Shown here: in pieces, positions 34,145 through 54,100 of the stretch
Layout of the letters: every line of letters starts with the position of its first letter
Position numbering within the stretch: position 1 is the stretch's first letter
IMG/VR virus record: IMGVR_UViG_3300030102_006934
Location: 186,001-250,000 of that record
Length of the DNA stretch: 64,000 bases
Strand: one strand, 5' to 3'
Program-made: the position numbers and the translations under genes
The notes under the pieces: model-generated
Seen by the model: the letters and a program-made list of their open reading frames with translations, nothing else
Database searches by the model: none
What the model was told of the DNA's origin: nothing

Positions 34145-34175
34145 AAAAAAGGGACTAAAAAGTCCCTTTTTTTTT
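34143..34175. terminator. Bidirectional intrinsic terminator
   Basis: AAAAAAAAGGGACT-AAAA-AGTCCCTTTTTTTTT between convergent genes. Confidence 0.9.
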
Positions 34176-34848
34176 ATCCAATAACCTCATCTATAATACC
34201 ATAGTCTAAAGCTTCTTTTGAACCTAACCACAAATCTCTTTGTGCGTCTTTTTCAACTCTTTTAGCTGTTTTACCACAGTACTTACCTAATAACTCAAAT
34301 AAAGTTTTATTAACCTTTTCCCACTCATCAAACTGTATTCTAGCGTCTTGTATGTTACCACCCGCTCCACCACTAGATTGATGTAACATAGTTCTTGAGT
34401 GTGGTAAAGAAGCTCTCATACCTTTTGTACCAGCACCTAATAATACTGAGCCCATTGAAGCGGCCATACCAGTATTAATTGTTTGTATTTTTGTTGGAAT
34501 ATAATTCATAACATCTACCATAGATAGACCAGCTTTCACACTACCACCAGGACTATCTATATGCATTGTTATAGTTTTCTTTGGATCTTGTTGTGATAAA
34601 TAAAGTAATTGTGCTTGTACTGTTATAGCCATTCTATCATCTACTGGACCAGCACACCAGATAATTCTATCCATCATTAGTCTATCAAATACAGACATTA
34701 CAGCCATATTTAATTGTCTCTCTTCTATAATAGTTGGGGTAACTGAAGCTGAAACGTTTGGTGCTACAGATTGTAACTCTTGATATGAGTTAATCATTTT
34801 TTCGTTTAAACCTAGGTGTTTTTTTGCGTACTTATTAAATTCTGACAT
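34174..34848 (-). CDS. clpP: ATP-dependent Clp protease proteolytic subunit (Bacteroidota-like)
   Basis: IDSPGGSV, AASMG (Ser), MLHQ (His), RDLW (Asp); N-terminus FNKYAKKHLG...PTIIEERQLN..VFDRLMMDRII. Confidence 0.95.
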   Translation of the reverse strand: MSEFNKYAKKHLGLNEKMINSYQELQSVAPNVSASVTPTIIEERQLNMAVMSVFDRLMMDRIIWCAGPVDDRMAITVQAQLLYLSQQDPKKTITMHIDSPGGSVKAGLSMVDVMNYIPTKIQTINTGMAASMGSVLLGAGTKGMRASLPHSRTMLHQSSGGAGGNIQDARIQFDEWEKVNKTLFELLGKYCGKTAKRVEKDAQRDLWLGSKEALDYGIIDEVIG

Positions 34849-34948: not shown

Positions 34949-37321
34949 ATGTCACTAAACAGGGATAACAACGCTTTATTAGATTTACTAGATAATAAGA
35001 TTGATTTAATAAAAATAGATTTAATAGAAACCATTGATGAACTAGATGGTTTGGAAAATAAGTTAATACCAGAAAGTCATTTATTATTAGAGAAGGTATC
35101 TTTATGGAGTAAGGTTAAGTACGGACTATCAAAATTAGGTAGGTATAAAGCTGGGGGTAAGATTTTAGGTAAAAGAAAAATAGACCAAGAGACCGCGGCT
35201 AAAATAGTTAGAATACTAGATAAAAAGGGTAATGAGTCTTTAAAAGAATTAGATTCTTTAATAAAACAACAAAGTTCTAAGGGTAAGGGTGATTTCCCAA
35301 ATAACCAAGACCCAGAGATATTTCTAAATATAATAGAGTCAATAGCGGCTGTTTACGATTCGATAGTGGAAGCTACTAAAAAGAATTCTGAAGAAAAAGG
35401 ATTTTTACCAATAGATGCTGCTAATTCAATTATACTAGATTTAAGAGAATATGTTAAGAAATTTTTAGATGTTGATTTATCAGCTGCCTATTCTGTTATG
35501 GATTCTGAAGAAGAAAAAGAAAGTGAATTAATAGTTGATAATACCATTGAAGAAGATAGGTCTAAGGATGTTAGGAAAAAATTACAGGCTAAAGTAGGTA
35601 AGGACGCCGAAAAAATAGATTCTCAAAGAATGAAGACTTTGAAGTCTTGGAAATTACCGTTAGCTTTATTAGGTACAGGAGCTTCTTTTGGGGCTTTAAG
35701 TTGGTTAATTCATTATCTTTTTGACCCTCAAGAAATTACTCAAATGTCACCTGAAGAAATAAGGTCGGCTAGTGAGGGTACTTTGGGGAATATTCAACCA
35801 GGTGAAGGATTTACTCAAATAATGAACAGAACAATGGATATGGATTTAGGACCAGGTTCAGACCCTAATGATGTTGTTGCTGGTTTATCTAAATTAGGTG
35901 ATGGTGATCCAAACGTGGGTATAGATATAATCACACAAAAAGGTGGTATATTTCAAGACCCAGTTGCGGCTAAAGCAACATTAAGTGAGATAGTTAGTAA
36001 CCCAAATGGTCATGGTGATAATTTAGGAGAAGTATTTAAAGGTGATTGGGCTGGTACTGGAAAAAATGCTGGTGATACTTTAGTTACTGTACCAGGTGGT
36101 ACTTTGAAGGGTATGATTGTTAAAAGTATTATTAGGTGGACAACCAAAAAAACTATTGTTGGTGGTAGTAAAATGTTAATAGCTGCACCAATACTTAAGA
36201 TATTAGGTATTGCTTTATTTGGTGGGGGTGTTGCTGTTAAATTAATGAGGGAAAAAGGTAAGAGACAATCTAGATCTAAAACCTTAGATGATTTATTACA
36301 ATCACTACAATTGGTTAAACCTACAAAAGAGAACCCACCTATCATAGATATTAAACCAGAAGATGAAGAAGACCCAGATGAAATTATAGATGACCCTAAA
36401 GGAGGTGAAGGAGATGACCCTAAAGGAGATGACCCTAAAGGAGATGACCCTAAAGGAGGCGAAGGAGATGACCCTAAAGGAGGCGAAGGAGATGACCCTA
36501 AAGGAGGTTCTGGTGGTGGAACAACAGGTGGGGGTACTGATGATCCTAGTATACCTAAAGATTTCCTAGATGGTAATAGAAACATGCAGTTAGCTTATTT
36601 ATCTAAAAACTTTTTACCTGGTGGTAAAAGTTTGTGGGATAGACTTGGATTAAAAGAGGGTACTGTTTTACCTTCTGGACTTTTTGACGCAGCTTTAGGA
36701 CAAGGTAAAGTAGACCAAGAAAAGTATTTAAAAGCCTTTTTCAATAAACTAAAAAAAGATGGTGACTTACTTAAGGACACTAGTTTTGATAAATGGAAGA
36801 AGGGTTTATTTAAGAAAGATAATTTAGCTTTAGTAGCGTGGATTAGGAATACTAGAAAAGGTATTGGTTCTTTCTTTAAAAAACTTAAGGACGCTTTCCC
36901 AGAGTTTGAAATTAGTACTAGAGCTAAAGCAGGTATCTCAAAACCTGGTCAAAGAGGTAAGGGAGCTGGAACAGCGGGTAGTATAAACAATTCAACAGAT
37001 ATTAGATATGATTTAATAATAGAAGCAGGTTTAGGTAGTACGGCTAATCAAGCTGGTTTTGACGAGTCTACTTTTATGAAAAATTTACCACAATTTATGA
37101 AAATGTTAGCTTCAATGTACTTTGGAGCTAAAGGTAGTAAGTTATACTATAATGAAAAGGCTGTATTAGATAAGTGTAAGAAATATGGTTGTAAAGCAAC
37201 ATCTTCAAAAGAGTTCGATAAAAGTGTTTCCGATGATTACTATTTAATAGATGATCAAAAAATGAAACAAGAAAAGACTTTAAACGAAGAAATAATGAGA
37301 ATAAGACAATTAATGAAATAA
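34949..37321 (+). CDS. Large putative head-packaged/ejected protein with two TM segments and DDPKG repeats
   Basis: Late motif upstream; LLLE/LIIE/LNEE sites; C-terminal LNEEIMRIRQLMK. Confidence 0.55.
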   Translation: MSLNRDNNALLDLLDNKIDLIKIDLIETIDELDGLENKLIPESHLLLEKVSLWSKVKYGLSKLGRYKAGGKILGKRKIDQETAAKIVRILDKKGNESLKELDSLIKQQSSKGKGDFPNNQDPEIFLNIIESIAAVYDSIVEATKKNSEEKGFLPIDAANSIILDLREYVKKFLDVDLSAAYSVMDSEEEKESELIVDNTIEEDRSKDVRKKLQAKVGKDAEKIDSQRMKTLKSWKLPLALLGTGASFGALSWLIHYLFDPQEITQMSPEEIRSASEGTLGNIQPGEGFTQIMNRTMDMDLGPGSDPNDVVAGLSKLGDGDPNVGIDIITQKGGIFQDPVAAKATLSEIVSNPNGHGDNLGEVFKGDWAGTGKNAGDTLVTVPGGTLKGMIVKSIIRWTTKKTIVGGSKMLIAAPILKILGIALFGGGVAVKLMREKGKRQSRSKTLDDLLQSLQLVKPTKENPPIIDIKPEDEEDPDEIIDDPKGGEGDDPKGDDPKGDDPKGGEGDDPKGGEGDDPKGGSGGGTTGGGTDDPSIPKDFLDGNRNMQLAYLSKNFLPGGKSLWDRLGLKEGTVLPSGLFDAALGQGKVDQEKYLKAFFNKLKKDGDLLKDTSFDKWKKGLFKKDNLALVAWIRNTRKGIGSFFKKLKDAFPEFEISTRAKAGISKPGQRGKGAGTAGSINNSTDIRYDLIIEAGLGSTANQAGFDESTFMKNLPQFMKMLASMYFGAKGSKLYYNEKAVLDKCKKYGCKATSSKEFDKSVSDDYYLIDDQKMKQEKTLNEEIMRIRQLMK
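36389..36507 (+). repeat. Six copies of GATGACCCTAAAGGAG (15/24-nt units; DDPKG or DDPKGGEG)
   Basis: Read directly from the sequence. Confidence 0.95.
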
Positions 37322-37377
37322 AACAAAATTGTCGCATATTTATAATAAAAGATAATAAAAAAGTAAAAACATAAACA

Positions 37378-37866
37378 ATGGCAGATTTATTGATGAGAAT
37401 GCCTGTTCCTTACGAACCAAAGAAAAAGAACAGGTTTATATTTAGATTCCCTACACCTCTTGGAATTCAAGAGTGGTTTGTAGCTTCTGGTTCTAGACCA
37501 GCAATTACTATAGAAGAGGTGCCTATTCAATTCTTAAACACCGAAACATACGTAGCGGGTAGATTTAATTGGGAGAGTATTGATGTAACATTTCGTGACC
37601 CTATTGGTCCTTCAGCGGCTCAGGCTCTTATGGAATGGGTTCGTTTACACGCGGAATCGGTAACAGGTCGTATGGGTTATGCAGCGGGTTATAAGAAAGA
37701 TATTGAGTTAGAATTATTAGACCCTACAGGTGTTGTCATTGAAAAATGGATACTACAAGGAACTATGTTAACAAACGTTAACTTTAACGATTTAGATTAT
37801 GGTTCATCTGATATTGCTGACATCAACGCTACTTTAAGATTTGATAGAGCTATACACGTATTCTAA
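37378..37866 (+). CDS. Tail tube protein (gp19-like)
   Basis: YEPKKKNRF, YVAGRFNW, YKKDIELELLDPTGVVIEKWILQG, LDY. Confidence 0.92.
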   Translation: MADLLMRMPVPYEPKKKNRFIFRFPTPLGIQEWFVASGSRPAITIEEVPIQFLNTETYVAGRFNWESIDVTFRDPIGPSAAQALMEWVRLHAESVTGRMGYAAGYKKDIELELLDPTGVVIEKWILQGTMLTNVNFNDLDYGSSDIADINATLRFDRAIHVF

Positions 37867-37882
37867 TAAAAAAATTAATTAT

Positions 37883-37911
37883 AAAAACCCTCTTTACTGG
37901 AGGGTTTTTTT
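37883..37911. terminator. Bidirectional terminator
   Basis: AAAAACCCTC-N7-GAGGGTTTTTTT. Confidence 0.85.
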
Positions 37912-38676
37912 ATGCTTTGAATCGAACCAAAAAGTTCTACCATTTCTATCTTTAATTTTTTCCTTTTTAGTATAACACCTCATCCATTCTCTAAATGTTA
38001 ATTTATCATCAAAGTATGGATTCATCCATTGTGATAGTTGTCCACCTCCTAGTTGGTAAGCTTCTTCAACCACAGTATCACACAAAGATAACATTTTTTT
38101 ATTTTTAATAGCTTCTCTAGAGGATACAAATGGGTCTTGGTCAGCTCTATCTAAAATCTCAGCTCTAAGGTAGTTACCCATTCCGTTGAAGTATTTTTGA
38201 TCTAACATTAATTCGTAAATTGGTTTGTCGAATATTTTTTTATGAGAATTATTATGTAAGTTGTCTACAAAATCATCCCATTCAGTTAACATACAAGGAC
38301 CTCTATTATCAGACCATCCATTACTTTCCTTCCATCTAGAAAATCTTCTAACATCATACATACATAATTTACCACCACTTAATGATTCAAAAATTATATG
38401 TGAGTGTTTAGGTACATTACCCTTCTCAATAAAAACCCAATTACCAGACATACCCATACCCATTAAAAACCTTTTCTCTTTTTTAGTTTTTACATCTTCA
38501 ATGACCAACATTAACTCTTTACCTCTACTAAAAGAATAAATTTTAAACTCTTTATAAGGTACACTTATATTTGGGTTTTTATTCTTTTCAGATTTTTTAA
38601 CGTCAACATAAGTTTCGTCTTTACTAACATAATTAATGTATTCAGACATAATTTTGACTTCTGCTAATTCAGGCAT
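37894..38676 (-). CDS. nei: Fpg/Nei DNA glycosylase, NEIL1-like (zincless finger)
   Basis: MPELAEV (Pro2-Glu3), RGKEL, GMSG, DVRRF, H2TH LDQKYFNGMGNYLRAEIL, DRNGRTFWF; no Cys4 zinc finger. Confidence 0.9.
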   Translation of the reverse strand: MPELAEVKIMSEYINYVSKDETYVDVKKSEKNKNPNISVPYKEFKIYSFSRGKELMLVIEDVKTKKEKRFLMGMGMSGNWVFIEKGNVPKHSHIIFESLSGGKLCMYDVRRFSRWKESNGWSDNRGPCMLTEWDDFVDNLHNNSHKKIFDKPIYELMLDQKYFNGMGNYLRAEILDRADQDPFVSSREAIKNKKMLSLCDTVVEEAYQLGGGQLSQWMNPYFDDKLTFREWMRCYTKKEKIKDRNGRTFWFDSKHKKTLQ

Positions 38677-38678
38677 TA

Positions 38679-38870
38679 TTATCTATTTTTATTGATTATT
38701 TTTTCTATTTTTTCAACCGTAGAGTCATCCAACTTCATTCTACCACCAAATTCCATTTTTATGATTAGTAGCTCGTTACTTATTGATGATATATCCGAGG
38801 TGTTCTTCCTTAATTTTGTTAACTCTCCTTTTAATTCTAATAAAAGGTCTAATCCTTTATTGATTGTCAT
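38679..38870 (-). CDS. Small hypothetical protein
   Basis: Sits between the peptidase and nei genes with tight spacing. Confidence 0.55.
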   Translation of the reverse strand: MTINKGLDLLLELKGELTKLRKNTSDISSISNELLIIKMEFGGRMKLDDSTVEKIEKIINKNR

Positions 38871-38879
38871 CTTTTTGAT

Positions 38880-39719
38880 TTAATTTTCGTCACCACCCTC
38901 CTCTAAAATAGTAGAGTAGTTAGGTTTATTTGTTAATAATTCACTTTTGGAACCTTCATAAAAGTTTTCACCGAGAATACTATGAAGTTTAATACCTAGA
39001 TTAAAAGCGTTTTGTACTTCTTCAACAACAACATATTCATCATCTGTATGATATCTATGGTAACCAGCCGCTAAATTAAGACAAGCGAAGTTGAATTTTT
39101 CCATTAAAGGCCAAATGTCCGTATATGGATGTCTTTCCCAACTAGTAACACCATGTTCTAATATTGGTTCGGAAACTTTTTCAGCGAAATCACTATTTTC
39201 AGAGAATAACCTTTTACCCATTAAAGTTAAACTCATTGAATTACCTTTGGGTGAATCATATTGAATAGCGTAACCCACATCTTTAAAAAAGTTAGGGTCT
39301 GCTTGATTTGAACCTATACAACCTATTTCTTCGGAAACAAAAAAGGCGACTTTAACATTATCTAATTTGTCTAACATCTCCAAACAAAGGTAAACACCAC
39401 ATTTATCATCCCCACCAATTCCTGAAGGTCTCATTGTTGTAGAATCAATACCAGTTAATATGGTCTTACCTTCTTCTTCTAGTTGAATGACTTTAAGATT
39501 TTTATTCACTCTATGAACTGTATCTGTGTGCGACACAAAACAAGGAAAATTATCAGTTTTACCTTTAGTAACATATATATTACCTATTTCATCTATATGA
39601 TGTTTGTAATTCTTTTGTGTTAGAACTTCTTTCAGATAATCTATCATCAATCCTTCATCTCTAGAGAATGTAGGTACCGATAATACTTCTTTCAATCTGT
39701 TTAAATTAGGGTCTTTCAT
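38880..39719 (-). CDS. M28/M20/M42-clan metallopeptidase
   Basis: SHTDTVH, GGDDKCG, SEEIG, YHTDDE. Confidence 0.85.
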   Translation of the reverse strand: MKDPNLNRLKEVLSVPTFSRDEGLMIDYLKEVLTQKNYKHHIDEIGNIYVTKGKTDNFPCFVSHTDTVHRVNKNLKVIQLEEEGKTILTGIDSTTMRPSGIGGDDKCGVYLCLEMLDKLDNVKVAFFVSEEIGCIGSNQADPNFFKDVGYAIQYDSPKGNSMSLTLMGKRLFSENSDFAEKVSEPILEHGVTSWERHPYTDIWPLMEKFNFACLNLAAGYHRYHTDDEYVVVEEVQNAFNLGIKLHSILGENFYEGSKSELLTNKPNYSTILEEGGDEN

Positions 39720-39742
39720 TTTAAAATCTTTTAATATTTAGA

Positions 39743-39774
39743 CAAATATAAAGACTTTTTTCCTATTAAACAAA
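39743..39774 (-). promoter_or_regulatory. Bacteroidota sigma-A type promoter
   Basis: TTTG (39774-71)-N20-TATATTTG (39750-43), an exact match to the -33/-7 consensus. Confidence 0.75.
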
Positions 39775-39941
39775 TTTTTTGTGATTTTTTTTGCTAGCGA
39801 AAGCTTTTCTTTGAGCTTATATGTATATTATATTAAGTAAAAGCATATTAATAATAATGATCTAAAAGCTGCTTAAAAAAATAAAAACAAAATATTTATG
39901 AATGTAAATAGTATAATAAAAGTTTTATAAAAAAAATATTA

Positions 39942-40715
39942 ATGGACGTACAAAATCAAACAATAGAAAACAAAAGTGTACAAGTAGAAGTACCTTATGA
40001 TATAATACCGTTACCTTCAAAAGGTTTATTATATCCAGGTAGAAAACCTAATTTAGAGGTTGAATACTTAACCGCTATGGATGAAAACATTCTAACATCT
40101 CCTAATCTTTTACAGTCAGGTAAATTTATAGAGGTTTTAATGAAAAGAAAAATAAGAAAAGGCCAAGTATCTCACGATGATTTGTTACTCGGTGACAGGA
40201 ATTCTATCTTAATATGGTTAAGAGCTACTGGTTATGGTGAAAAATATCCAGTAACAATACAAACACCAGAAGGACTAGAAATAGAAACAGAGGTAGATTT
40301 AACAAAATTGAAACAAAAAGAATTAGGAGCAGAACCAGACGATAATGGATTATTCGATTTTACCTTACCCCAATCTAAGAAAAGAATTAAATTTAGGTTA
40401 TTAACGGTAAAAGATGAAGATGAATTAACAAAAAGAGAAAAAGCTCAAGAAAAAAGAAAGGCTGAATTTTCAGACAGCTTAACACACAAGTTAGGTACAC
40501 ATATCATGAGTATTGATGGTCGTAATGATAAAGAATGGATACATAATTTTGTTAGAGTTATGCCGGCTAGAGATTCATTAGCTTTAAGAAGATATATAAA
40601 TGATATCGAACCAGGTGTCGATTTATCTATCACAGTGGAGGGTCCTGGAGGTGACCCTATAGACACATTTCTTGTCCTTGGACCAGACTTTCTTTGGCCT
40701 GAGTTCGGAGTATAA
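39942..40715 (+). CDS. Baseplate hub assembly / tail assembly chaperone (gp26-like)
   Basis: IPLPSKGLLY, LTAMDENIL, LLLGDR, LRATGYG, FTLP, FRLLT, FLWP terminus. Confidence 0.8.
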   Translation: MDVQNQTIENKSVQVEVPYDIIPLPSKGLLYPGRKPNLEVEYLTAMDENILTSPNLLQSGKFIEVLMKRKIRKGQVSHDDLLLGDRNSILIWLRATGYGEKYPVTIQTPEGLEIETEVDLTKLKQKELGAEPDDNGLFDFTLPQSKKRIKFRLLTVKDEDELTKREKAQEKRKAEFSDSLTHKLGTHIMSIDGRNDKEWIHNFVRVMPARDSLALRRYINDIEPGVDLSITVEGPGGDPIDTFLVLGPDFLWPEFGV

Positions 40716-45482: not shown

Positions 45483-48400
45483 ATGCCTTCTATAAATCCC
45501 GAAAATTACAACATAAACAGTTTCAATAGTCAAACATTAGGACCAATTACAGTCCAAGACTTTAGGGATTATGTGTTAAAACACAACCTCCCTGGTTTAG
45601 ACCCAGTTTTAGCTAGTAACGGAATAGATAATTACGGCTTAAATATTTACGCACCTTTATTATTTAACCCATCAGATACGGTGAACGATTTACCTAATTT
45701 ATCTGAAGTAGCTTTTATACCTAGCCCAATAAACGATAATACCTCACCTAGACCAGACAATAAAAAAAGAAATTTATTCACCAACGAAGAACCTTTCATT
45801 GGTTCTGAAACAGAGGAAGAGATTTTTTCTGTAACAACAAGGTCTCTGGAAGATCCAGGTTCTATAGATTCTTGGGTAGAGGGAGCTGGTTTTTCAACAG
45901 ATGTATTTTCGGTTAGAAATTTTAACAACTTAACTAACAATGAGTACGGACCAGAATACGTAGAAACTTATAATGACCCTGACCAACCATTAGAATCTAC
46001 AGGTTATAAACAATATCCATCAGACGCTGGTGGAGATGTAATAGGACCAGTAATAGCTAGAAGTTTAGGTTTTAGTCCTGAGAATTTTATTAATTTCCCA
46101 TCACCACTACAAGATACAGCTAAGGAAAGAAGAATTGAAGAATTAACAAATAGAGTTAAATTAAACTTTGTTGATGATACTGTTGGTAGATTAAATTTAG
46201 ACCCTTTAGGTTTATTAGCTGGACAAAGCATTTTTCTACCAGATTATACAATAACTAAAAGAAAAGGTATACTTGGTAAAGCGGCTCAATTCGCAGCTAG
46301 TTTAGGTGGTTTCAATTGGCCTAGAAGTCCACTAAAAGGTGGCAAAAATCCTGACTTAGGGAGTAACGCTTTCCAAGCAGACTTATTAGACTTCACTGGT
46401 AAAGCACAAAGGAAAATTTTATATAAAAATGTTTACTCTAGTAAGTACACACCAGAATTACTAACAAAAGGTTATGATTTAGAAAATGCGGGAGCCGATA
46501 CTTTAAGTGCTGGTGGAGCCGAATCTTTAGGTGAGGGAAAGAAAACACCTAACAACTATTTAAAATTAAATAAAAAATTAAATAAAGACGAATCTACTAG
46601 AGAACGTAGAGTAGGTAATTGGTTAAGGGATTTAACAACTAAAGGAGATCAAACATTACAACCAGATAGTGATAGACTAACCACACCATCGGACCCATTT
46701 GTAACCATGGGTGTAACAGGACAATATCCATCAATAGATAATCTTGATCCCGAATCTACATTTGTTGAATTAGATTTTATAACACCACCATCTTATCAAT
46801 ATGGGGATGAAAACTACTACCCAAACAAAACCACATTAAAACCATCACAAGAGGATAGTGATAGTGGTCTAAATAGTTTTACTCACACAACACCTGGTAC
46901 AAAAAACTTATTCTATTGGCAGAATAGGGACAGAAGTGTCGCTAAAAGAGGTTTATTAGATTTTACTCAAAAAATGATTAATAATACAGACGCGAATGGA
47001 TATAGAGGTGGAGCTAAATTTATTGGTCGTTTTGATAGTGATAGTAATCTAAAGGATGTACAAGTTGATGTGGGTGATGGAGATGTAAGAAACGTACCTA
47101 GGTCGAAAGATGTCTCCAAAGGTAACTTACTTCGAGGAGCAGATGGTGACCATTATTGTCGTTCATGGACAACTAGAAATCCATACCAAAACCATTATGA
47201 TTTAATTAGAAGAAGTAGGTTATACAGAGCGGGTGGTGGTTCGGATACAGGACCATTCCCAGGGCCATACCAAAGTACATTAGAAGATAATGGACATGTT
47301 AAGATAGCACCTTATTCGTCAGATGACTTTGATATTGATGCCGATGTAACAAATGCTAGAGGAATATTTAACTCTGGTAATGATGTTAAAAGATATATGT
47401 TCTCCATAGAAAATTTAGCTTGGGCTGATGCAACAGAAAAAATAGCATTAGAAACTTGTGAAATAGGCCCAAATGGTGGTAGAATAATGTGGTTCCCACC
47501 TTATGATATTAACTTTACAGATAATACAACGGCTAATTGGGACTCAACCGTATTCTTGGGTAGAGCTGAACCAGTCTACACATATAATCATACAGAAAGA
47601 AAAGGTACTTTAAGTTGGTCTATAATTACAGATCACCCATCCGTTTTAAATAAACTAAAAAGTCCATTAGAGGGTAAAATATTAGAATTTTTTGCTGGAT
47701 GTGGTGTAGATGTTACTAAATTTTATGAAGAAATAAAAGAAGAAATTTTAAGGATAGAAATACCAGTAATCGAAGATGAGGATGAAGATGATGATGAAGA
47801 TGAAGTTATTACACCAACTCCAGTAATAAAAAAAGAACCACCCGTTAAAAAGTTAAGTTTTTATTTTAGGAATGCTGGACCAGGAGATGGTAGTGCTAAA
47901 GGTAGACCTGGTGTGGGTAGAACTATCGAGAAAGAAATTGCCGTAAATTATGATACGGGTAAATTTAGTAGTGATGGTGTTGGAAAGAATCAAATATCTA
48001 AAACTAAAACAGGTGATTATTTAATGTTGAATGAAAATCGTTGGTTTACAACGGAAGGTGATGAGAGTAAGGGTATAGATGCTTTAATAGACTTTTTAGC
48101 AACAGAAGACGGTCAAGAATGGTCTATTAAATTAGAGGGTTTCTGTAGTGCCGCTTCAACCGACACATATAATCAAATGTTATCCATAGATAGGGTACAA
48201 CGTGTTTATGAGTATATGGCTAAAGCCGTAAAAGAAAGAGGTGAAACTGGTGGTTCTGGTTATACATATATACCTGAAAACTTTAAAAAGGCACATTTTG
48301 GTTATAAGTGTACTGATGGTACCGATGATAAAAGAACTTCTTATCGAAAACAAAAAGATGCTGAACTAGGTATGGATTCTAGGAAATGTGCAGAATGTTT

Positions 48401-50789
48401 TTCGGTTGGTAGAAAATACGGTTACTACCCTTACGTGGGGTCAATCAAAGATATTGGTACGCCTAAATCTGAAAATATAACTGAGGAAGAACTATCTAAA
48501 TTAGGGAGATGGATTACAGTTGCTAAAAGTGAGGATTACGCGGCCCAAGTTGATGAAGATGGGTTGCCTTTGGAAAGTGAACAATTAGACGGTACAGTAA
48601 TATCCGTGGGTACTCTATCTAATAAAGCTAAAGAAGATAGAAAAGTAGTGGTAACTTTATTTAGAAACCATGAGTATGTTGCACAAAATACAAAAGTTGA
48701 AGATGACCCATCTTTATCTTCTGAATTAGAATTAACTAGATTACCAATTCAACCCTTACCAGAAAGAATAGGACCAGAACCACCAGGAACACCCAAAACC
48801 ATCTTGATACCAGACGCGATAGATTTTCCTTCCGATTCCATCACCTTCTCACCAAACGGTGACTTGTTACAAGATGGATTACCAGTCATGGAATACCGTG
48901 AAGAACCTAAAAAAACTAGAAAACAAAGAAGGTTAGAAAAAAAGAAAAATAAAAACCAAGAGTACGAAAAAGAAGTTGTTACTTCGGCTGGTACAAAAAC
49001 TATAATGACAAAATACGGTGAAATAATAGAACTACCAACTACTGAAGCTTTATTGAAACAAAAAGCTGTAGAAGACCAGATTCGAACAACTGAAGAGATA
49101 GCTAGAAGAGCGGCAGATGGTGGTGTCTCTGAAAACGTAAACGATGATGAAATTAGTGAAAACCCTATTATCACTGAAAAAGTTGTTAAGAGAGTAGTTC
49201 AAAAATTATTTAGGGAGTGTGAATACTTTGAAAAAATAAAAGTATCAGATCCTTTTTTATATGAAACTATAGAAGAAAAAGTTAAATTTTTTCATCCAGC
49301 TTTTCATTCTATCACACCAGAGGGGTTAAATAGTAGGTTAACTTTCTTACAACAATGTATGAGACAAGGGCCAAGTTTAAGAGACTCAAACAATATTACA
49401 CAAAACATGGCTTTTGGTAAACCACCCGTTTTAGTACTAAGAATAGGTGATTTTTATTACACTAAAATAATACCAGATTCATTAAACATAAATTACGAAC
49501 CACTACAATGGGATATGAACCCTGAAGGTGTTGGTGTACAACCTATGATTGCCAAAGTAGATTTAAACTTTAGTATGGTGGGGGGCTCTAGTTTAGACGG
49601 ACCAATAAATAGATTACAAAACGCAGTATCTTTTAACTTTTTCGCCAATACTTCTGTTTATAACCCTAGAAGATATTATGATGGTAATATAGCTAATAGA
49701 AGTGCTTTCAGTACGATGGAAGAAAAACTAGAGGAAGATGCTAATAAAATAGAGTTGAATAATCAAAATATAGGATTTGGGGCTTTCAAAACACAAGACC
49801 AAGCCTCCTTAGAATTCTATGGTAAAGATACGGGTGGTCAACAAAGTAATGTTAAAACAGACGATAAAGATAAAGGTGATAAAAATGAAGATGAAGAAAT
49901 TAAAGCAACATTCTATTTTAATGATTTAGGGATATCACCTAAAGGAGCTTCAATACCAGAAGAACAAAAAATAAAAACTAATATTTTAATAGACCCTAAT
50001 CAACCAAATAAACCAATAGATGAAGCGTTATTAATGGGTACCACTGGTGAGGTTGAAGTTGAGGGTGTAGACCCAACAACTAGTGTTTTTTACGCTGGTG
50101 GATTTATGGGGACTGAATCTGACCAAGAAGAAATATCTAATATGTATCCAGGTTCAACCACACCACTAATAGAGTTAAGGTCAGATTTGTTTTATAGAGT
50201 TCAGTACAAAGAAGTGGTGGAACTACCATTGGGTGAAGAAGTTTTAACAGGTAATATAAACCCACAAGTTAATATTAATGAATCCAATATAAAAGCAAAA
50301 TACCCAGATGGGTCTGGTGGTATTTTATTAGATACAATAACATTCGGTATAACTAACGAGGGTAGAAAACAAGGTTGGTATGTATCCCCAAGAGTTGAGC
50401 TTAAAATGACTTATCCAGATGGTGAAGTTAAAACTCTACAAGATAAGGCTTATATTGTATCCACCACATCATCAATCGAAAGTTTAGGTAAACCATATAC
50501 TGATAATACGGTTATCACTACAGACGTAGCAATGGTATTAACTTTTGAAGTTCAAAGATACTACTTAGATTGGTTTGATTTAGATGGTTTTGAAAATGGT
50601 AATTACAAATTAGACATTACTTGGATATATGCTAGAGAAGTTACAGAAGAAACACAAGGAATAGACCCTACTAAAAACGTTGGTGACTTAGTGATTAAGG
50701 AGTATACAGAAAGTTTAGTATATGACTTGTATAGTGAAGATTATGTTGACACAACCCTAATAGGACCACAACCAAACCCAACACCTTAA
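45483..50789 (+). CDS. Baseplate/tube-initiator-like protein with inserted OmpA-like peptidoglycan-binding domain
   Basis: Tube-like halves FPPYDINFTD..ANWDS..LGRAEPVYTY and KPPVLVLRIGD..SLNINYE flank IKLEGFCS...YNQMLSIDR...DRKV. Confidence 0.6.
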   Translation: MPSINPENYNINSFNSQTLGPITVQDFRDYVLKHNLPGLDPVLASNGIDNYGLNIYAPLLFNPSDTVNDLPNLSEVAFIPSPINDNTSPRPDNKKRNLFTNEEPFIGSETEEEIFSVTTRSLEDPGSIDSWVEGAGFSTDVFSVRNFNNLTNNEYGPEYVETYNDPDQPLESTGYKQYPSDAGGDVIGPVIARSLGFSPENFINFPSPLQDTAKERRIEELTNRVKLNFVDDTVGRLNLDPLGLLAGQSIFLPDYTITKRKGILGKAAQFAASLGGFNWPRSPLKGGKNPDLGSNAFQADLLDFTGKAQRKILYKNVYSSKYTPELLTKGYDLENAGADTLSAGGAESLGEGKKTPNNYLKLNKKLNKDESTRERRVGNWLRDLTTKGDQTLQPDSDRLTTPSDPFVTMGVTGQYPSIDNLDPESTFVELDFITPPSYQYGDENYYPNKTTLKPSQEDSDSGLNSFTHTTPGTKNLFYWQNRDRSVAKRGLLDFTQKMINNTDANGYRGGAKFIGRFDSDSNLKDVQVDVGDGDVRNVPRSKDVSKGNLLRGADGDHYCRSWTTRNPYQNHYDLIRRSRLYRAGGGSDTGPFPGPYQSTLEDNGHVKIAPYSSDDFDIDADVTNARGIFNSGNDVKRYMFSIENLAWADATEKIALETCEIGPNGGRIMWFPPYDINFTDNTTANWDSTVFLGRAEPVYTYNHTERKGTLSWSIITDHPSVLNKLKSPLEGKILEFFAGCGVDVTKFYEEIKEEILRIEIPVIEDEDEDDDEDEVITPTPVIKKEPPVKKLSFYFRNAGPGDGSAKGRPGVGRTIEKEIAVNYDTGKFSSDGVGKNQISKTKTGDYLMLNENRWFTTEGDESKGIDALIDFLATEDGQEWSIKLEGFCSAASTDTYNQMLSIDRVQRVYEYMAKAVKERGETGGSGYTYIPENFKKAHFGYKCTDGTDDKRTSYRKQKDAELGMDSRKCAECFSVGRKYGYYPYVGSIKDIGTPKSENITEEELSKLGRWITVAKSEDYAAQVDEDGLPLESEQLDGTVISVGTLSNKAKEDRKVVVTLFRNHEYVAQNTKVEDDPSLSSELELTRLPIQPLPERIGPEPPGTPKTILIPDAIDFPSDSITFSPNGDLLQDGLPVMEYREEPKKTRKQRRLEKKKNKNQEYEKEVVTSAGTKTIMTKYGEIIELPTTEALLKQKAVEDQIRTTEEIARRAADGGVSENVNDDEISENPIITEKVVKRVVQKLFRECEYFEKIKVSDPFLYETIEEKVKFFHPAFHSITPEGLNSRLTFLQQCMRQGPSLRDSNNITQNMAFGKPPVLVLRIGDFYYTKIIPDSLNINYEPLQWDMNPEGVGVQPMIAKVDLNFSMVGGSSLDGPINRLQNAVSFNFFANTSVYNPRRYYDGNIANRSAFSTMEEKLEEDANKIELNNQNIGFGAFKTQDQASLEFYGKDTGGQQSNVKTDDKDKGDKNEDEEIKATFYFNDLGISPKGASIPEEQKIKTNILIDPNQPNKPIDEALLMGTTGEVEVEGVDPTTSVFYAGGFMGTESDQEEISNMYPGSTTPLIELRSDLFYRVQYKEVVELPLGEEVLTGNINPQVNINESNIKAKYPDGSGGILLDTITFGITNEGRKQGWYVSPRVELKMTYPDGEVKTLQDKAYIVSTTSSIESLGKPYTDNTVITTDVAMVLTFEVQRYYLDWFDLDGFENGNYKLDITWIYAREVTEETQGIDPTKNVGDLVIKEYTESLVYDLYSEDYVDTTLIGPQPNPTP

Positions 50790-50844: not shown

Positions 50845-51168
50845 ATGGGAACTAGTTATTTTGATAGGTACGGTAATTTTAAAAATAAGGATAAATTTAG
50901 TTTTATACCCTTTATAAAGTTATCAAAAAAACCAACAGATTTAAATATAAAATGGAAAGAAACCAAAAGACTAGATAAAGTTTCAAATGACGTTTATGGG
51001 TCACCCTTTTATGGGTGGTTAATATTACTAGCCAACCCAAAGTATGGTGGGTTGGAGTTTGATATTCCAGATGGTGTTTCACTAAGGATACCATTCCCAT
51101 TAATGGAAAGTTTACAAGACTACCAAAAAAAAGTAGATAATTATATTTTACAAAATGGCAGAGAGTAG
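50845..51168 (+). CDS. Baseplate wedge protein (gp53/LysM-like)
   Basis: RLDKVSNDVYGSPFYGWLILLANP...LRIP. Confidence 0.8.
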   Translation: MGTSYFDRYGNFKNKDKFSFIPFIKLSKKPTDLNIKWKETKRLDKVSNDVYGSPFYGWLILLANPKYGGLEFDIPDGVSLRIPFPLMESLQDYQKKVDNYILQNGRE

Positions 51169-54100
51169 TACACAGTTTGGTTGTAATGACTTAGCTAAAA
51201 ATGTTTCTGGTTGTGAGGAGAATGGTAACATAAGACTAATCAACCCAAACGCACAAATAGATGAGGAAGGTGTTAAAAATGAAGACCTAGTCATGTATGC
51301 GACATTAAGAGCTAGAGTAAAAAACAAAAGTTTATTATTAGACAAAGACGATGAGTTATGGAATGAATTGACTTTTATAAAAGCCAAGTCAAACGCTCCA
51401 GGCCAAGCCGCTGAAGGTTCTGCAAACGCTACACCAGAAAATACTAGTTTTTTAACCACTAATTGGACCGACATAGGTTCATCAGATATGTTATTTGAAA
51501 AAGATCATGAAACTTTTGGTATAACTAATATAAATGTGGATATACAGGCAGACTTTATACCAAAAATAAGTATAGATTTCGTAGATTTAAGAGGAGCCAC
51601 TTTATTTGAACAAGGATCTTGTTCACCTTATGCTAGTTTCTTTCACCAACCGTACCCAGTATTTGAGTTAGTACTTAAAGGTTATTATGGTAGTCCGATA
51701 AAATATCAGTTGATGGTCCAAGACTTTAAAACATCTTTTGATGCTAGTACTGGTAATTACGTTTCTAAAGCTGAAATGATAGGTTTTAACTACGCCTTCT
51801 TAGGTGATATTATGTTAGCTTACGTTTTAGCTGTACCCTATATAGAAGGGTCAGATGAGATACTAACATCAATATACCAAGACTATTTAAATTATTATAA
51901 AGAAAGAGGTTTTAATGAGGGTAGGAATAAATTCGAACCCTTAAGTGCTGATGATAACTCACCATTAACACTTTATAATTACGTAAGAAAATTACAAGAA
52001 CTAGAAGGCCAAGGTAATTCAGACAAAGGACCTATTGCAGAAATACAAAGTTCATCTGAGTTATTTACCATAGAAAACCTAGATAAGTTCCAAGAGATAT
52101 TAAATGATATTGATGAATTTATAGATAAAGATTTTGATGAGTCTTGGAAAAAAAAGGGTGGTAAGAATGTAAATAATTTATATTACTATGGTGATGGTTC
52201 AGTTGGTGATACTGGTGTAAACACTGATAATTTATTGGACGTTTATAGTAATTTTTTTGGTTCGGTTGGTAAGATAACCACCTCAATAGCTGTTTATAAT
52301 GATTTAGTCGGTGATTCTGGTTCTTCATCTTTAACACCAATAATATCAAACCCAAAAGTAGAAAAAACATCTACTTACTTGTTAAGTTTAGATTTAGAAG
52401 GTCTAAAGAATGAAATGAATAATAAGTTGGATGAAATTTCTTTGGACTTAAAGACTAAAAGAAAAGAATTTATAGATTTAGCTAATGCTAAAATAAAGTC
52501 TTCCGTAGGTTTCGTACCCACTATAAGAAGTTTTTTTACTACTTTAATCGCTAACACAGAATTATTTTTAGAACTACTTAGGACCACGTCTTACGATGCA
52601 GAACAATATCATCAAAAAAACAAAGATTCTGATAAAATAAGGTTTAAAAATGAGGAGGACGTTCCAGTATCGGATATTGTTTATGCTTGGCCTACATATA
52701 CAGAAATAAGACAAAGTGGGACTAGAGATGAAACGGAAGTAGAAGTTTACCCAGGAACTAACCCAAAGTTCCAAAATTGGCCTGAAGTAATATTCGTAGA
52801 AAACCTATTAAAAGCTCTCACTGAAATGAACAGAAAGTTACAAGAAGGTGATGGAGAGGAAGTTAATCCAGAAGTAGATCCATATGATGGTATACCAGGT
52901 AGAGATAACTATTTCCCAGTCAATGCCATGGAAACACCTCTAGGTGCTAGAGACGCTAATAATAGTTATTATAACCTAAACTCAAAAGATGCTGTCATAA
53001 GGTCTTTGGGTGAAAGATTTATACTATACAGTAATGTTACAGGTGTTAACTCTAATTTTTTAAATACATCGGTGATAGCTTCAGCTAAAAATAGTTTTAA
53101 CGAAACACTATTATTAAGGGGTAAATATGCTATACAACCCGTAGAATTTAACTTAAATAAATCCTTTAATCCCTCTAAAAAATATCAGATATTTCCAGGT
53201 ATAGAAAAATTAAATAACGGCGTTTTAACACCTTATTTTAGTGCTGGACATTATTTTAAACCTAAAAAGTTTGGTGGTGAAGATTTAAACATTAATACAA
53301 ATCTAACTTATAGCCAAAACTATAAAAAAATAGGTGGTATCAAAGGTTACCCATATATAGATGATAGAAAATTCTTCGGAAACTACGTAAGTCCTATGGG
53401 TTTACCTTTATCTAGAGAAGCTAGTGAAACTGAAGATACTTATAACAATGATTGGAATAATATTGGTTATTTAATGGAAGGTGATGGTGAGGTTAAAAGT
53501 AGTAATAACCTAACTTACGAAGAATTAACACCATCATCTGAATTACGTACACATGTAATTAGTTTCAAAATACCTAAAATAACCCAAACAGATTTTAGAA
53601 CAAAATTTGAAAAAAGTTTTAAATATGAGGGTAATTTAGGTAATAAAAAAAGTTTTACTAACGATGAAAATGTGGTTGTTCTAGAACCACTTTATTACAC
53701 TAAAAAAATGGTAATAATATTTGTTGATAAGAATACCACAAAACCAGGTTACAGTATTGAAAATCACATATCACAGGTACCAAAAAATGTTAGAGACAAA
53801 GCGTGGATTATATTATGTACTAATTATGTTGGTTACGATTATAAGGGTAAAAATAAATCTGCTAGAGCAGAGTTTTTAAGTAATTATCTTGAGACTGACA
53901 ATTATCTACAACTAGTAAACATAGTTGTAGAAATACTTTATAAAGCAAAAGGAAACCCAACCCGAAAGCTGACTTCAGAAGAAATAGACTTATCATCAGG
54001 TATAGATTCATTTTTTGATATAACCTTATTAGGGTATGGATCTGGTTCTCTTGAAGCCTTTTTATATGGAGACACCCAAGAAACTTTAGACAATGTAGAA

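What the first reader, a model, noticed from the sequence alone, without database searches (positions are those of the whole stretch)
37894..38676. Phage DNA glycosylase that resembles eukaryotic NEIL1 more than bacterial Fpg/Nei
Seen motifs track human NEIL1 as I recall it: RGPCMLTEWDDF (RGPCVLQEYQQF), IFDKPIYELMLDQKYFNGMGNYLRAEIL (AFDRPICEALLDQRFFNGIGNYLRAEIL), QLGG, FREWMRCY (FRAWLRCY) and DRNGRTFWF (DRHGRTIWF). It has a zincless finger instead of the bacterial Cys4 finger. Inference: a phage clade close to NEIL1, relevant to NEIL1 origin or cross-domain transfer. It may repair oxidised bases in ssDNA or at forks; it sits in an operon driven by a host-type promoter.
Basis: partly seen in the sequence, partly recalled or inferred. 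Interest (0 to 1): 0.65.

Follow-up and report, generated by a model that had tools for sequence, protein, structure and literature searches.

The report
NEIL1-type DNA glycosylase in marine jumbo phage
A 380-kb marine tailed phage encodes a compact DNA-repair glycosylase that groups with animal NEIL1, not with bacterial Fpg/Nei; its family is found here almost only in large phages, which makes the origin of NEIL1 testable.

Summary
Window 37894-38676 (-) is an intact 260-aa ORF. It matches human NEIL1 at E 2.7e-47, against 6e-7 for Mimivirus Nei1, 5e-4 for E. coli Fpg and 0.77 for E. coli Nei. It passes Pfam's NEIL1 zincless-finger model and has no Cys4 finger. Its AlphaFold model (pLDDT 91) superposes on human NEIL1 at TM 0.85-0.88.

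The genome is a 380-kb T4-like tailed phage from marine metagenomes. The protein belongs to a large family: over 1,400 clusters at 90% identity and 426 IMG/VR contigs, mostly fragments of phages of about 250-340 kb. A motif scan of 185,579 prokaryotic species genomes found two hits, and both are phage-like contigs inside MAGs.

In a site-heterogeneous ML tree, phage and eukaryotic NEIL1 sequences form one clade (100/99) that excludes bacterial Fpg/Nei. The direction of transfer is not resolved. AU tests do not reject the two alternative arrangements tested. One sequence character argues against a eukaryote-to-phage origin: phages keep the Fpg-type GGxxLKD[FW] loop that eukaryotic NEIL1 lacks.

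The most likely function is a bifunctional glycosylase/AP lyase that repairs oxidised bases in phage DNA. The "host-type promoter" claim is not supported.

The parts
37894..38676 (-). CDS of the 260-aa NEIL1-type Fpg/Nei DNA glycosylase (P0001)
   Evidence: ORF. PDB phmmer gives E 2.7e-47 to human NEIL1. Pfam finds Fapy_DNA_glyco, Neil1-DNA_bind and H2TH. The AF2 model has pLDDT 91. The top 50 Foldseek hits are all human NEIL1.
38668..38673 (-). Codons for Pro2 and Glu3, the N-terminal catalytic pair
   Evidence: The protein starts MPE, aligned to MPE of NEIL1. M1, P2, E3 and E6 are invariant in alignment A1. All 110 unique viral homologues start MPE.
38518..38520 (-). Codon for Lys53, the equivalent of NEIL1 Lys54
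   Evidence: SRGKEL aligns to ARGKEL of NEIL1. G52, K53 and E54 are invariant in A1.
38152..38199 (-). H2TH DNA-binding motif (residues 160-175)
   Evidence: It aligns to the NEIL1 H2TH block. Q160, Y162, F163, G165, G167, N168, Y169, L170 and R171 are invariant in A1. Pfam H2TH scores 24.2 bits, below its cut-off of 34.7.
38026..38049 (-). Post-H2TH loop (residues 210-217), the Fpg-type GGxxLKD[FW] motif; family consensus GGGQLKDW
   Evidence: 103 of 110 viral homologues carry the strict motif. None of 51 eukaryote-clade sequences does. E. coli, Neisseria and Geobacillus Fpg have GGTTLKDF, GGSTLRDF and GGSTVRTY. This is the lowest-confidence part of the model, pLDDT 64-71.
37918..37998 (-). 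Zincless finger (residues 227-253), including Arg247, the equivalent of NEIL1 Arg277
   Evidence: PF09292 matches residues 227-253 at 30.4 bits against a cut-off of 25. D243, R247 and W250 are invariant in A1. The model has a beta-hairpin at 239-242 and 248-251. There is no Cys4 pattern.
38679..38870 (-). 63-aa ORF of unknown function, 2 nt upstream of the glycosylase start
   Evidence: ORF list and sequence. No PHROG or Pfam match.
38880..39719 (-). 279-aa peptidase-like gene, first gene of the minus-strand three-gene unit
   Evidence: phrog_4191 'peptidase', E 3.6e-46. Conserved next to the glycosylase in the closest relatives L106 and L109.
39720..39941 (.). AT-rich divergent intergenic region, the presumed promoter region of the three-gene unit
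   Evidence: Sequence. It holds weak sigma-70-like matches. It also holds one TTTG-N20-TATATTTG match at 39743-39774, which is not enriched in the window (5 found against 2.5 expected).
37883..37909 (.). 11-bp-stem hairpin with T/A runs on both sides, between the convergent tail-tube and glycosylase genes; a terminator-like site
   Evidence: Terminator scan.
37378..37866 (+). Context: gp19-like tail tube gene, convergent with the glycosylase
   Evidence: phrog_4542, E 1.1e-28. Covered by metatranscriptome contigs at 100% identity.

Best explanation
The ORF encodes a functional, minimal NEIL1-type DNA glycosylase/AP lyase of a marine T4-like jumbo phage. By homology, Pro2 forms a Schiff base with C1' of a flipped-out damaged nucleotide. 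Glu3 and Lys53 assist base excision and beta,delta-elimination. Met76, Arg110 and Phe112 fill the gap left in the helix. The H2TH motif and the zincless-finger Arg247 hold the lesion phosphates. The enzyme most likely removes oxidised or ring-opened bases from phage DNA during infection of a bacterium in oxidising, sunlit sea water. It would leave a one-nucleotide gap that host enzymes finish. It is one member of a large family found here in phage contigs only, and that family forms a single clade with eukaryotic NEIL1. Shown: sequence, fold, conserved residues, phage context, distribution and the joint clade. Inferred: activity, substrates, timing and the direction of transfer.
For: Similarity to NEIL1: E 2.7e-47, and 33-38% identity across the whole catalytic core. 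Fold: pLDDT 91, and the top 50 PDB hits are all human NEIL1 at TM 0.85-0.88. Residues: P2, E3, E6, K53, M76, R110, F112, the H2TH motif and R247 are invariant or nearly so across 31 family members; 110 of 110 viral homologues start MPE and none has a Cys4 finger. Selection: the family is diverse (40-50% identity between members) yet keeps these residues. Phage context: tail tube, baseplate hub, tape measure and ClpP in the window; a T4-like TerL nearest to Flavobacterium and Microcystis phages; 9 of 40 related IMG/VR records carry Terminase_6N and none had a match to the NCLDV capsid model, though that search had no positive control; the ESM Atlas labels the nearest clusters 89-95% viral, mostly Uroviricota. 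Repair and replication context: in other family members the gene lies beside PolB, topoisomerase II, a DinG/XPD-like helicase, RNR, ThyA, dCMP deaminase and a sigma-70 factor. UvdE is adjacent in one lineage, and the window's own genome also has a UvdE. Joint clade with eukaryotic NEIL1: 100/99 support.
Against: No biochemical data exist. The lesion-recognition loop differs from NEIL1: the query has S-Q-W and the family K-D-W where NEIL1 has K242-G-Y244, and this loop is the least confident part of the model. Substrate range may therefore differ. The C-terminal interaction tail of NEIL1 is absent. No RNA contig covers the gene in two metatranscriptomes that do cover the neighbouring tail-tube gene. 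With the Pfam models tried, the phage's own genome shows no ligase and no 3'-phosphatase to complete repair.
Confidence: 0.8

Rival explanations
1. Eukaryote-to-phage capture. The phage family descends from a eukaryotic (holozoan or protist) NEIL1 that an ancestral large phage picked up and that then spread among phages.
For: In the best ML tree (LG+C20+F+G4 PMSF, 78 rows) the outgroup attaches among protist sequences. The short (phage plus metagenome) sequences, together with the Salpingoeca sequence, are sister to Metazoa at 91/72. Eukaryotes form one clan in 0 of 200 bootstrap trees.
Against: The AU test does not reject eukaryote monophyly (p 0.344). The basal protist rows have long branches (about 1.0) and the outgroup stem is long, so long-branch attraction is likely. 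Phages keep the Fpg-type GGxxLKD[FW] loop (103 of 110), and no eukaryote-clade sequence has it (0 of 51). They also keep the bacterial-length 37-44-residue segment after H2TH, which is expanded to 47-61 in nearly all Metazoa. A eukaryotic origin would need reversals of both. These phages carry sigma-70 factors and T4-like modules, which points to bacterial hosts.
Confidence: 0.25
2. Phage-to-eukaryote origin. Eukaryotic NEIL1 descends from this phage family or its stem. The family itself evolved from a bacterial Fpg by loss of the zinc finger.
For: The family is absent from cellular prokaryotes in the scans made. The only two hits among 185,579 species genomes are phage-like contigs in MAGs, and 200 other Bacteroidota genomes hold only canonical Fpg/Nei at E 2.8e-12 or weaker. 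Phage proteins combine the Fpg-type loop with the NEIL1-type zincless finger, an intermediate state. FastTree and the 110-row quick tree put short sequences at the base. The AU test does not reject basal short lineages lying outside a (eukaryote plus core phage) group (p 0.417).
Against: The careful ML tree does not show this topology. The short sequences form one clan in 64% of bootstrap trees. Rooting depends on very distant outgroups. An unsampled bacterial donor to both groups cannot be excluded.
Confidence: 0.35
3. The enzyme is not a general oxidative-damage repair enzyme. It acts instead on a phage-specific or host-specific base, for example in base hypermodification, host-DNA degradation or counter-defence.
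For: In many family members the gene lies among nucleotide-metabolism genes typical of phages that modify their DNA: dCMP deaminase, ThyA-like, guanylate kinase and RNR. The lesion-recognition loop differs from NEIL1.
Against: All catalytic and helix-invading residues of a damage glycosylase are conserved. UvdE, a damage endonuclease, is adjacent in one lineage and present in the window's own genome. No specific modification pathway was identified here.
Confidence: 0.12
4. The gene is a eukaryotic contaminant or an assembly chimera, not part of the phage.
For: None found.
Against: Independent IMG/VR contigs L106 and L109 show the same gene order: tail tube, glycosylase, peptidase, baseplate hub. 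Their glycosylase is 86% identical and their neighbouring genes 84-99% identical. DNA contigs from 8 studies other than the possible source hold the stretch. GC content and coding density match the surroundings.
Confidence: 0.01

Closest known systems
Metazoan NEIL1 (human NEIL1; PDB 1TDH, 5ITX, 6LWA-6LWR)
   Same: Same fold: TM 0.85-0.88 and 34-36% identity. The phage protein has the same N-terminal Pro-Glu catalytic pair. It has equivalents of Lys54 and of Met81, Arg118 and Phe120. It shares the H2TH motif and the zincless finger with the Arg277 equivalent. The two fall in one clade against bacterial Fpg/Nei.
   Different: The phage protein is 260 aa and ends just after the zincless finger, so it lacks the roughly 100-residue disordered C-terminal tail. 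It lacks the insertion of about 20 residues after H2TH. In place of the K242-G-Y244 recognition loop it has the Fpg-type GGxxLKD[FW] loop. It is encoded by a bacteriophage.
Mimivirus Nei1 (MvNei1; PDB 3A42, 3A46, 3VK8) and other giant-virus Fpg-like proteins
   Same: Virus-encoded Fpg/Nei glycosylases. MvNei1 has a zincless finger and has been called a viral NEIL1 ortholog (title of ref 72, quoted in PMC3188539).
   Different: They are much more distant from this protein than human NEIL1 is: E 6e-7 against 2.7e-47. Giant-virus entries in BFVD reach only 16-20% identity and TM 0.51-0.75. PMC3188539 places MvNei1 outside the metazoan Neil1 clade. Their hosts are eukaryotes, not bacteria.
Bacterial Fpg/MutM (E. 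coli 1K82, Geobacillus 1R2Y)
   Same: Same superfamily and the same N-terminal MPE catalytic start. They share the GG[ST]T[LV][KR][DT][FY]-type loop after H2TH.
   Different: Fpg has a Cys4 zinc finger, which is absent here. Identity is only 27%, at E 1e-8. In the tree Fpg lies across a 100/99 branch.
E. coli endonuclease VIII (Nei; 1K3W)
   Same: Same superfamily, and an expected similar substrate class (oxidised pyrimidines).
   Different: 22% identity over the N-terminal 184 columns only, at E 3e-7. Nei has a zinc finger. It is the most distant outgroup in the tree.
Bacillus phage G gp292 and a Staphylococcus phage Fpg-like ORF
   Same: Phage-encoded members of the Fpg/Nei superfamily.
   Different: Identity is only 20% (TM 0.72) and 26% over 62% of the query. 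They are not NEIL1-type.
T4 endonuclease V (DenV) - functional analogue, from general knowledge
   Same: A phage-encoded DNA glycosylase/AP lyase that repairs damage in the phage genome.
   Different: Unrelated fold and a different lesion (pyrimidine dimers). The DenV family PF03013 is absent from this genome. This phage has UvdE instead.

Membership tests
NEIL1 subfamily of Fpg/Nei glycosylases | N-terminal Pro2 nucleophile with Glu3, directly after the initiator Met | tested here: met
   The protein starts MPE, aligned to NEIL1 MPE. These residues are invariant in A1. 110 of 110 viral homologues start MPE.
NEIL1 subfamily of Fpg/Nei glycosylases | Catalytic Lys54 equivalent | tested here: met
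   K53 in SRGKEL aligns to ARGKEL. It is invariant in A1.
NEIL1 subfamily of Fpg/Nei glycosylases | Helix-two-turn-helix DNA-binding motif | tested here: met
   The block is nearly identical to that of NEIL1 and is helical in the model. The Pfam H2TH score is below its cut-off, 24.2 against 34.7 bits.
NEIL1 subfamily of Fpg/Nei glycosylases | Zincless finger: a beta-hairpin with no Cys4, carrying the Arg277 equivalent | tested here: met
   PF09292 scores 30.4 bits against a cut-off of 25. R247 is invariant. The hairpin spans 239-251 in the model. None of 110 viral sequences has CxxC...CxxC.
NEIL1 subfamily of Fpg/Nei glycosylases | Void-filling residues Met81, Arg118, Phe120 | tested here: met
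   M76, R110 and F112 align to them. R110 and F112 are invariant in A1 and M76 is nearly invariant.
NEIL1 subfamily of Fpg/Nei glycosylases | Lesion-recognition loop with K/R242 and Tyr244 | tested here: not met
   The query has GGGQLSQW and the family consensus is GGGQLKDW, which is the Fpg-type loop. K-D-W may be homologous to K-G-Y, but that was not established.
NEIL1 subfamily of Fpg/Nei glycosylases | Disordered C-terminal protein-interaction tail (a metazoan feature) | tested here: not met
   The protein ends 7 residues after the Pfam-matched zincless-finger stretch (260 aa in all). Family members are 250-290 aa.
NEIL1 subfamily of Fpg/Nei glycosylases | Groups with NEIL1 and apart from bacterial Fpg/Nei in a phylogeny | tested here: met
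   The branch separating 65 phage and eukaryote rows from 13 bacterial Fpg/Nei rows has 100/99 support. Plant and fungal Fpg, NEIL2, NEIL3 and MvNei1 could not be included.
NEIL1 subfamily of Fpg/Nei glycosylases | Glycosylase plus beta,delta-lyase activity on oxidised pyrimidines, Fapy lesions and hydantoins | not testable with these tools
   Needs enzyme assays.
Bacterial Fpg/MutM | C-terminal Cys4 zinc finger | tested here: not met
   There is a single Cys in the C-terminal 60 residues and no CxxC pairs. BLASTP against E. coli MutM aligns nothing beyond residue 219.
Bacterial Fpg/MutM | GG[ST]T[LV][KR][DT][FY] loop after H2TH | tested here: met
   The loop aligns directly to GGTTLKDF of E. 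coli MutM. 103 of 110 viral homologues carry the strict motif.
Tailed bacteriophage (Caudoviricetes), T4-like | Tail, baseplate and large terminase genes on the same contig | tested here: met
   A gp19-like tail tube, gp26-like baseplate hub and tape measure lie in the window. TerL lies at G000:C1:145-146 kb and matches T4-like terminases.

The most novel reading that the evidence does not exclude
Eukaryotic NEIL1 was acquired from a lineage of large T4-like phages. On this reading the phage family is the surviving 'missing link' between bacterial Fpg and NEIL1: it has already lost the zinc finger but still carries the Fpg-type GGxxLKD[FW] loop and the short post-H2TH segment. This would add a nuclear and mitochondrial base-excision repair enzyme to the short list of eukaryotic DNA-maintenance proteins of phage origin.
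Probability: 0.35. Interest if true: 0.85.

Novelty: new member of a known kind. Interest (0 to 1): 0.68.

Why it matters
Published Fpg/Nei phylogenies treat NEIL1 as a metazoan clade ('MeNeil1' in PMC3188539) with no close prokaryotic counterpart. Here its nearest relatives outside eukaryotes form a large and diverse family: over 1,400 clusters at 90% identity and 426 IMG/VR contigs. In the collections searched, the family occurs in large aquatic phages and not in bacterial genomes. Three things follow.

1. NEIL1's origin becomes testable, through dense phylogeny and ancestral character states.

2. The family offers a natural minimal NEIL1 core of 260 aa, without the tail and the insertion, for structural and mechanistic work. 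Its recognition loop is naturally different.

3. Large marine phages appear to carry their own oxidative-damage repair alongside UvdE.

I found no paper describing phage NEIL1 homologues. Only automatic JGI labels ('endonuclease VIII-like 1') exist.

Tried and rejected
1. FastTree on 161 rows put eukaryotic NEIL1 (99* clade) inside a grade of phage-like sequences. That result is not robust. The PMSF quick tree moved the root, and the careful tree with more Fpg outgroups moved it again. I do not rely on the FastTree topology.

2. Sigma-70 promoter scan of 37300-40100: 12 sites found against 14.1 expected, so no support for a host-type promoter. The Bacteroidota-type pattern TTTG-N18-21-TAnnTTTG gives 5 matches against 2.5 expected in the window. 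Genome-wide, TAnnTTTG occurs 55 times upstream of ORFs against 35 expected, and TATAAT 95 against 52. The host phylum is not settled.

3. GenBank phages (INPHARED): tblastn found only a 26%-identity Staphylococcus phage ORF, and megablast of 16 kb found nothing.

4. Contexts of metagenomic representatives: most sit on contigs of 1-3 kb and are uninformative. P0157 lies beside an NAD-dependent ligase. P0167 lies beside UvdE.

5. Searches of the window's own genome for LigA, ATP-dependent ligase, PNK3P and DenV were all negative.

6. NCLDV capsid search in 40 related records was negative, but nothing matched anywhere, including the control genomes, so there is no positive control. It is weak evidence on its own.

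7. Scanning IMG/VR with a eukaryotic NEIL1 alignment found no eukaryote-type copies in viral contigs; the best segments reach 34-46% identity.

8. No tRNA genes in the window.

9. Not possible: adding MvNei1, NEIL2, NEIL3 and plant or fungal Fpg to the tree. No tool gave me their sequences by reference, and I did not type them in.
Full report
**Observation.** Window 37894-38676 on the minus strand runs from ATG to stop and encodes 260 aa. In the HMMER alignment to PDB chains each one faces the matching human NEIL1 segment. The similarity is specific to NEIL1:
- human NEIL1: E 2.7e-47
- Mimivirus Nei1: 6e-7
- E. coli Fpg: 5e-4
- E. coli Nei: 0.77 (all)

Pairwise BLASTP gives 33% identity over 284 columns to a primate NEIL1 (E 1e-57). 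It gives 27% to E. coli MutM (E 1e-8) and 22% to E. coli Nei (E 3e-7). Pfam finds Fapy_DNA_glyco (E 1.5e-12). It also finds the NEIL1-specific zincless-finger domain PF09292, above its curated cut-off. H2TH falls below its cut-off.

**What the genome is.** The window is bases 186001-250000 of a 380,343-bp IMG/VR virus record rated complete. The record has 31% GC and about 92% coding density.
- Around the gene lie a gp19-like tail tube, a gp26-like baseplate hub, a tape-measure-like protein and a ClpP-type protease.
- The large terminase is T4-like. Its nearest matches are Flavobacterium phage immuto (31% identity), Microcystis phage Mel-JY01 and an uncultured 484-kb phage.
- The stretch occurs in marine metagenomes from 8 studies other than the possible source.

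The gene is therefore phage-borne, in a marine jumbo myovirus-like phage. The host is unknown. Hints toward Bacteroidota are weak: the TerL neighbours, the two MAG bins described below, and one TTTG-N20-TATATTTG site upstream of the cassette.

**Local anatomy.** The glycosylase is the last gene of a tightly packed minus-strand unit of three genes:
- a peptidase-like gene at 39719-38880;
- a 63-aa ORF at 38870-38679;
- the glycosylase at 38676-37894.

The gaps between them are 9 and 2 nt. The unit sits inside a plus-strand structural module. Upstream lies a 222-nt AT-rich divergent intergenic region. Downstream, a hairpin with an 11-bp stem (37883-37909) lies between the glycosylase and the convergent tail-tube gene. 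Sigma-70-like sites are not enriched (12 found against 14.1 in shuffles), so the 'host-type promoter' stays unsupported.

Two marine metatranscriptomes carry 100%-identical RNA contigs over the tail-tube gene and part of the baseplate hub gene. None covers the three-gene unit. Contigs show presence, not absence, so this says only that transcription of the glycosylase is not shown. The closest relatives (86% identity, L106 and L109) keep the same gene order.

**The family.**
- A word-indexed search found 1,405 clusters at 90% identity. The best 120 are all 163-288 aa, and most are 250-285 aa.
- The exhaustive HMMER search over 1.84 billion representatives found 939 hits at E <= 1e-3 and 153 at E <= 1e-30.
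- IMG/VR holds 426 contigs that encode a relative.
- In 40 of those records, CheckV completeness figures imply parent genomes of mostly 250-340 kb. Nine records carry Terminase_6N. None matches the NCLDV capsid model, but that search had no positive control.
- The ESM Atlas labels the nearest clusters 89-95% viral, mostly Uroviricota.
- In more distant family members the gene lies among replication and nucleotide-metabolism genes: PolB, topoisomerase II subunits, a DinG/XPD-like helicase, RNR, ThyA, dCMP deaminase, guanylate kinase and a sigma-70 factor. In one lineage it lies next to UvdE.

The family looks absent from cellular prokaryotes. Motif scans of one genome for each of 185,579 prokaryotic species found only two loci. 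One is 97-100% identical at the protein level to an IMG/VR contig for nearly every gene across 12.7 kb. The other shares gene order with viral loci. Both are therefore phage contigs binned into MAGs. Among 201 Bacteroidota genomes only that MAG scored (3e-100). All the others had ordinary Fpg/Nei at 2.8e-12 or weaker. GenBank phages and UniProt viral structures hold no member. The only hits there are giant-virus Fpg proteins and Bacillus phage G gp292, at 16-20% identity.

**Structure and residues.** AlphaFold2 with the family alignment gives pLDDT 91.1 and pTM 0.85. The top 50 Foldseek hits in the PDB are all human NEIL1, at TM 0.85-0.88 and 33-36% identity.

Residues conserved across 31 family members include:
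- M1, P2, E3 and E6;
- G52, K53 and E54 (K53 matches NEIL1 K54);
- M76 (NEIL1 M81);
- D108, R110, R111 and F112 (NEIL1 R118 and F120);
- the H2TH block;
- D243, R247 and W250 of the zincless finger (R247 matches NEIL1 R277).

No viral, short metagenomic or eukaryote-type sequence has a CxxC...CxxC finger. Ten of the 18 bacterial outgroups do.

The protein differs from NEIL1 in three ways:
- it has no C-terminal tail;
- it lacks the insertion of about 20 residues after H2TH;
- it has a different loop after the QLGG motif.

**Phylogeny.** The long hits in the exhaustive search are eukaryotic NEIL1. They come from tuatara, primates, a barnacle, a ctenophore, a coral, molluscs and the choanoflagellate Salpingoeca rosetta (on a 1.9-Mb genomic scaffold). 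Transcriptome sequences from a euglenid, an archamoeba and an MMETSP protist also fall there.

I built trees from four sets of sequences: IMG/VR proteins, metagenomic short representatives, eukaryotic sequences, and bacterial Fpg/Nei outgroups. The outgroups were taken by reference from E. coli K-12 and Bacteroidota genomes.

The careful IQ-TREE run (LG+C20+F+G4 PMSF, 78 rows by 265 columns) separates phage plus eukaryote sequences from the 13 bacterial outgroups with 100/99 support. Metazoa get 98/98. Inside that clade the order is unstable:
- FastTree nests eukaryotes within a short-sequence grade.
- A 110-row quick tree gives a polytomy.
- The careful tree roots among long-branched protist sequences. 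It makes the short sequences plus Salpingoeca sister to Metazoa (91/72). The short sequences form one clan in 64% of bootstrap trees.

AU tests reject neither eukaryote monophyly (p 0.344) nor a tree in which basal short lineages lie outside a (eukaryote plus core phage) group (p 0.417). The direction of transfer is therefore unresolved by likelihood.

**Discrete characters.** These give some polarity.
- The zincless finger is shared by phages and eukaryotes. The segment is 10-12 residues in nearly all of them, against 20 in the outgroups.
- The loop after H2TH is of Fpg type in phages. 103 of 110 carry GGxx[LIV][KR][DET][WFY], with consensus GGGQLKDW. E. coli, Neisseria and Geobacillus Fpg have GGTTLKDF, GGSTLRDF and GGSTVRTY. 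None of 51 eukaryote-clade sequences has the motif.
- The segment between H2TH and this loop is 39-41 residues in bacteria and 37-44 in nearly all phage and short metagenomic sequences. It is 40-51 in protists and 47-61 in nearly all Metazoa.

The phage proteins thus look like an intermediate state. This fits a common ancestor or a phage-to-eukaryote route better than capture from a eukaryote. It rests on a few characters only.

**Mechanism (inferred).** The enzyme is most likely a bifunctional glycosylase/AP lyase. Pro2 would be the nucleophile, and Glu3 and Lys53 would assist. Met76, Arg110 and Phe112 would plug the helix. H2TH and Arg247 would grip the lesion strand. The product would be a one-nucleotide gap.

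The phage genome also encodes UvdE (E 5e-71) and a PolB. The Pfam models tried found no LigA, ATP-dependent ligase, PNK3P or DenV. Gap processing and sealing would then fall to host enzymes or to unrecognised phage proteins. Genomes of several hundred kilobases exposed to oxidising, sunlit water are a plausible selective reason. The replication-module context in relatives fits replication-associated repair, as proposed for NEIL1. That remains inference.

**Comparison and novelty.** The protein meets the sequence and fold criteria of the NEIL1 subfamily, except for the recognition-loop residues and the metazoan tail. It fails the zinc-finger criterion of Fpg and Nei. Published work treats NEIL1 as a metazoan clade and places MvNei1 outside it (PMC3188539). 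My literature searches found nothing on phage NEIL1 homologues. JGI's automatic annotation already labels many family members 'endonuclease VIII-like 1'. I therefore rate it a new, phage-borne member and subfamily of a known enzyme kind. The open and interesting question is where NEIL1 came from.

**Limits.**
- There is no biochemistry.
- The tree lacks MvNei1, NEIL2, NEIL3 and plant or fungal Fpg, because no tool supplied their sequences by reference and I did not type any.
- The outgroups are distant and several Bacteroidota ones are atypical.
- The origin of many 'short' metagenomic representatives is inferred from family membership, not from their contigs.
- Three protist sequences come from transcriptomes.

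Noticed in passing
window 51155-63451 (+); 45483-50789 (+); 6886-11505 (+): Three giant ORFs of 4098, 1768 and 1539 aa lie in the structural region. Only the largest has any PHROG hit, a weak amidase-like stretch at residues 3361-3434. The other two have none.
   Followed up: partly
window 34949-37321 (+): A 790-aa protein with a run of tandem DDPKG(G/E)-type repeats and hydrophobic segments, just upstream of the tail tube gene. No Pfam or PHROG match.
   Followed up: no
window 34174-34848 (-): A ClpP-family protease (Pfam E 2.9e-60; PHROG 'head maturation protease') encoded on the opposite strand to the surrounding structural genes.
   Followed up: no
window 38880-39719 (-) and 38679-38870 (-): A peptidase-like gene (phrog_4191, no Pfam hit) and a 63-aa ORF form one tight unit with the glycosylase. 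The pairing of a peptidase with a repair glycosylase is unexplained. The peptidase-glycosylase pairing is conserved in the closest relatives L106 and L109.
   Followed up: partly
window 37191-37834 and 40186-40701: Marine metatranscriptome contigs (runs X15, X17) match the tail-tube gene and part of the baseplate-hub gene at 100% identity. This suggests the phage was active in those samples. No RNA contig covers 37894-39719.
   Followed up: partly
window 37895-37898; 37879/37913; 39679/39910: DNA contigs of related strains show a 3-nt deletion at the 3' end of the glycosylase gene. They also stop matching at both borders of the three-gene unit, which hints at mosaicism at the cassette edges.
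   Followed up: no
G000:C1:122741-123532 (-), outside the window: The same phage encodes a UvdE UV-damage endonuclease (E 5e-71). In another family lineage (L244) UvdE lies next to the NEIL1-like gene, along with SmpB, HNH, HD and sulfotransferase genes.
   Followed up: partly
L002 (Saprospirales MAG contig CALAZP010000278.1) and L003 (Flavobacteriaceae MAG contig PAUJ01000027.1): Two contigs binned into Bacteroidota MAGs are phage sequence. L002 is 97-100% identical at the protein level to IMG/VR contig L221 for nearly every gene across 12.7 kb. This is either a binning artefact or a hint to the host.
   Followed up: partly
L101/L102 (metagenome contigs carrying P0157): In this lineage the NEIL1-like gene overlaps the start of an NAD-dependent DNA ligase gene by 8 nt, a possible glycosylase-ligase repair pair.
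   Followed up: no
whole genome G000: TAnnTTTG (the Bacteroidota -7 consensus) occurs 55 times within 100 nt upstream of 431 ORFs against 35 expected, mostly 10-40 nt from the ATG. TATAAT is also enriched, 95 against 52. The promoter type and host phylum remain open.
   Followed up: partly
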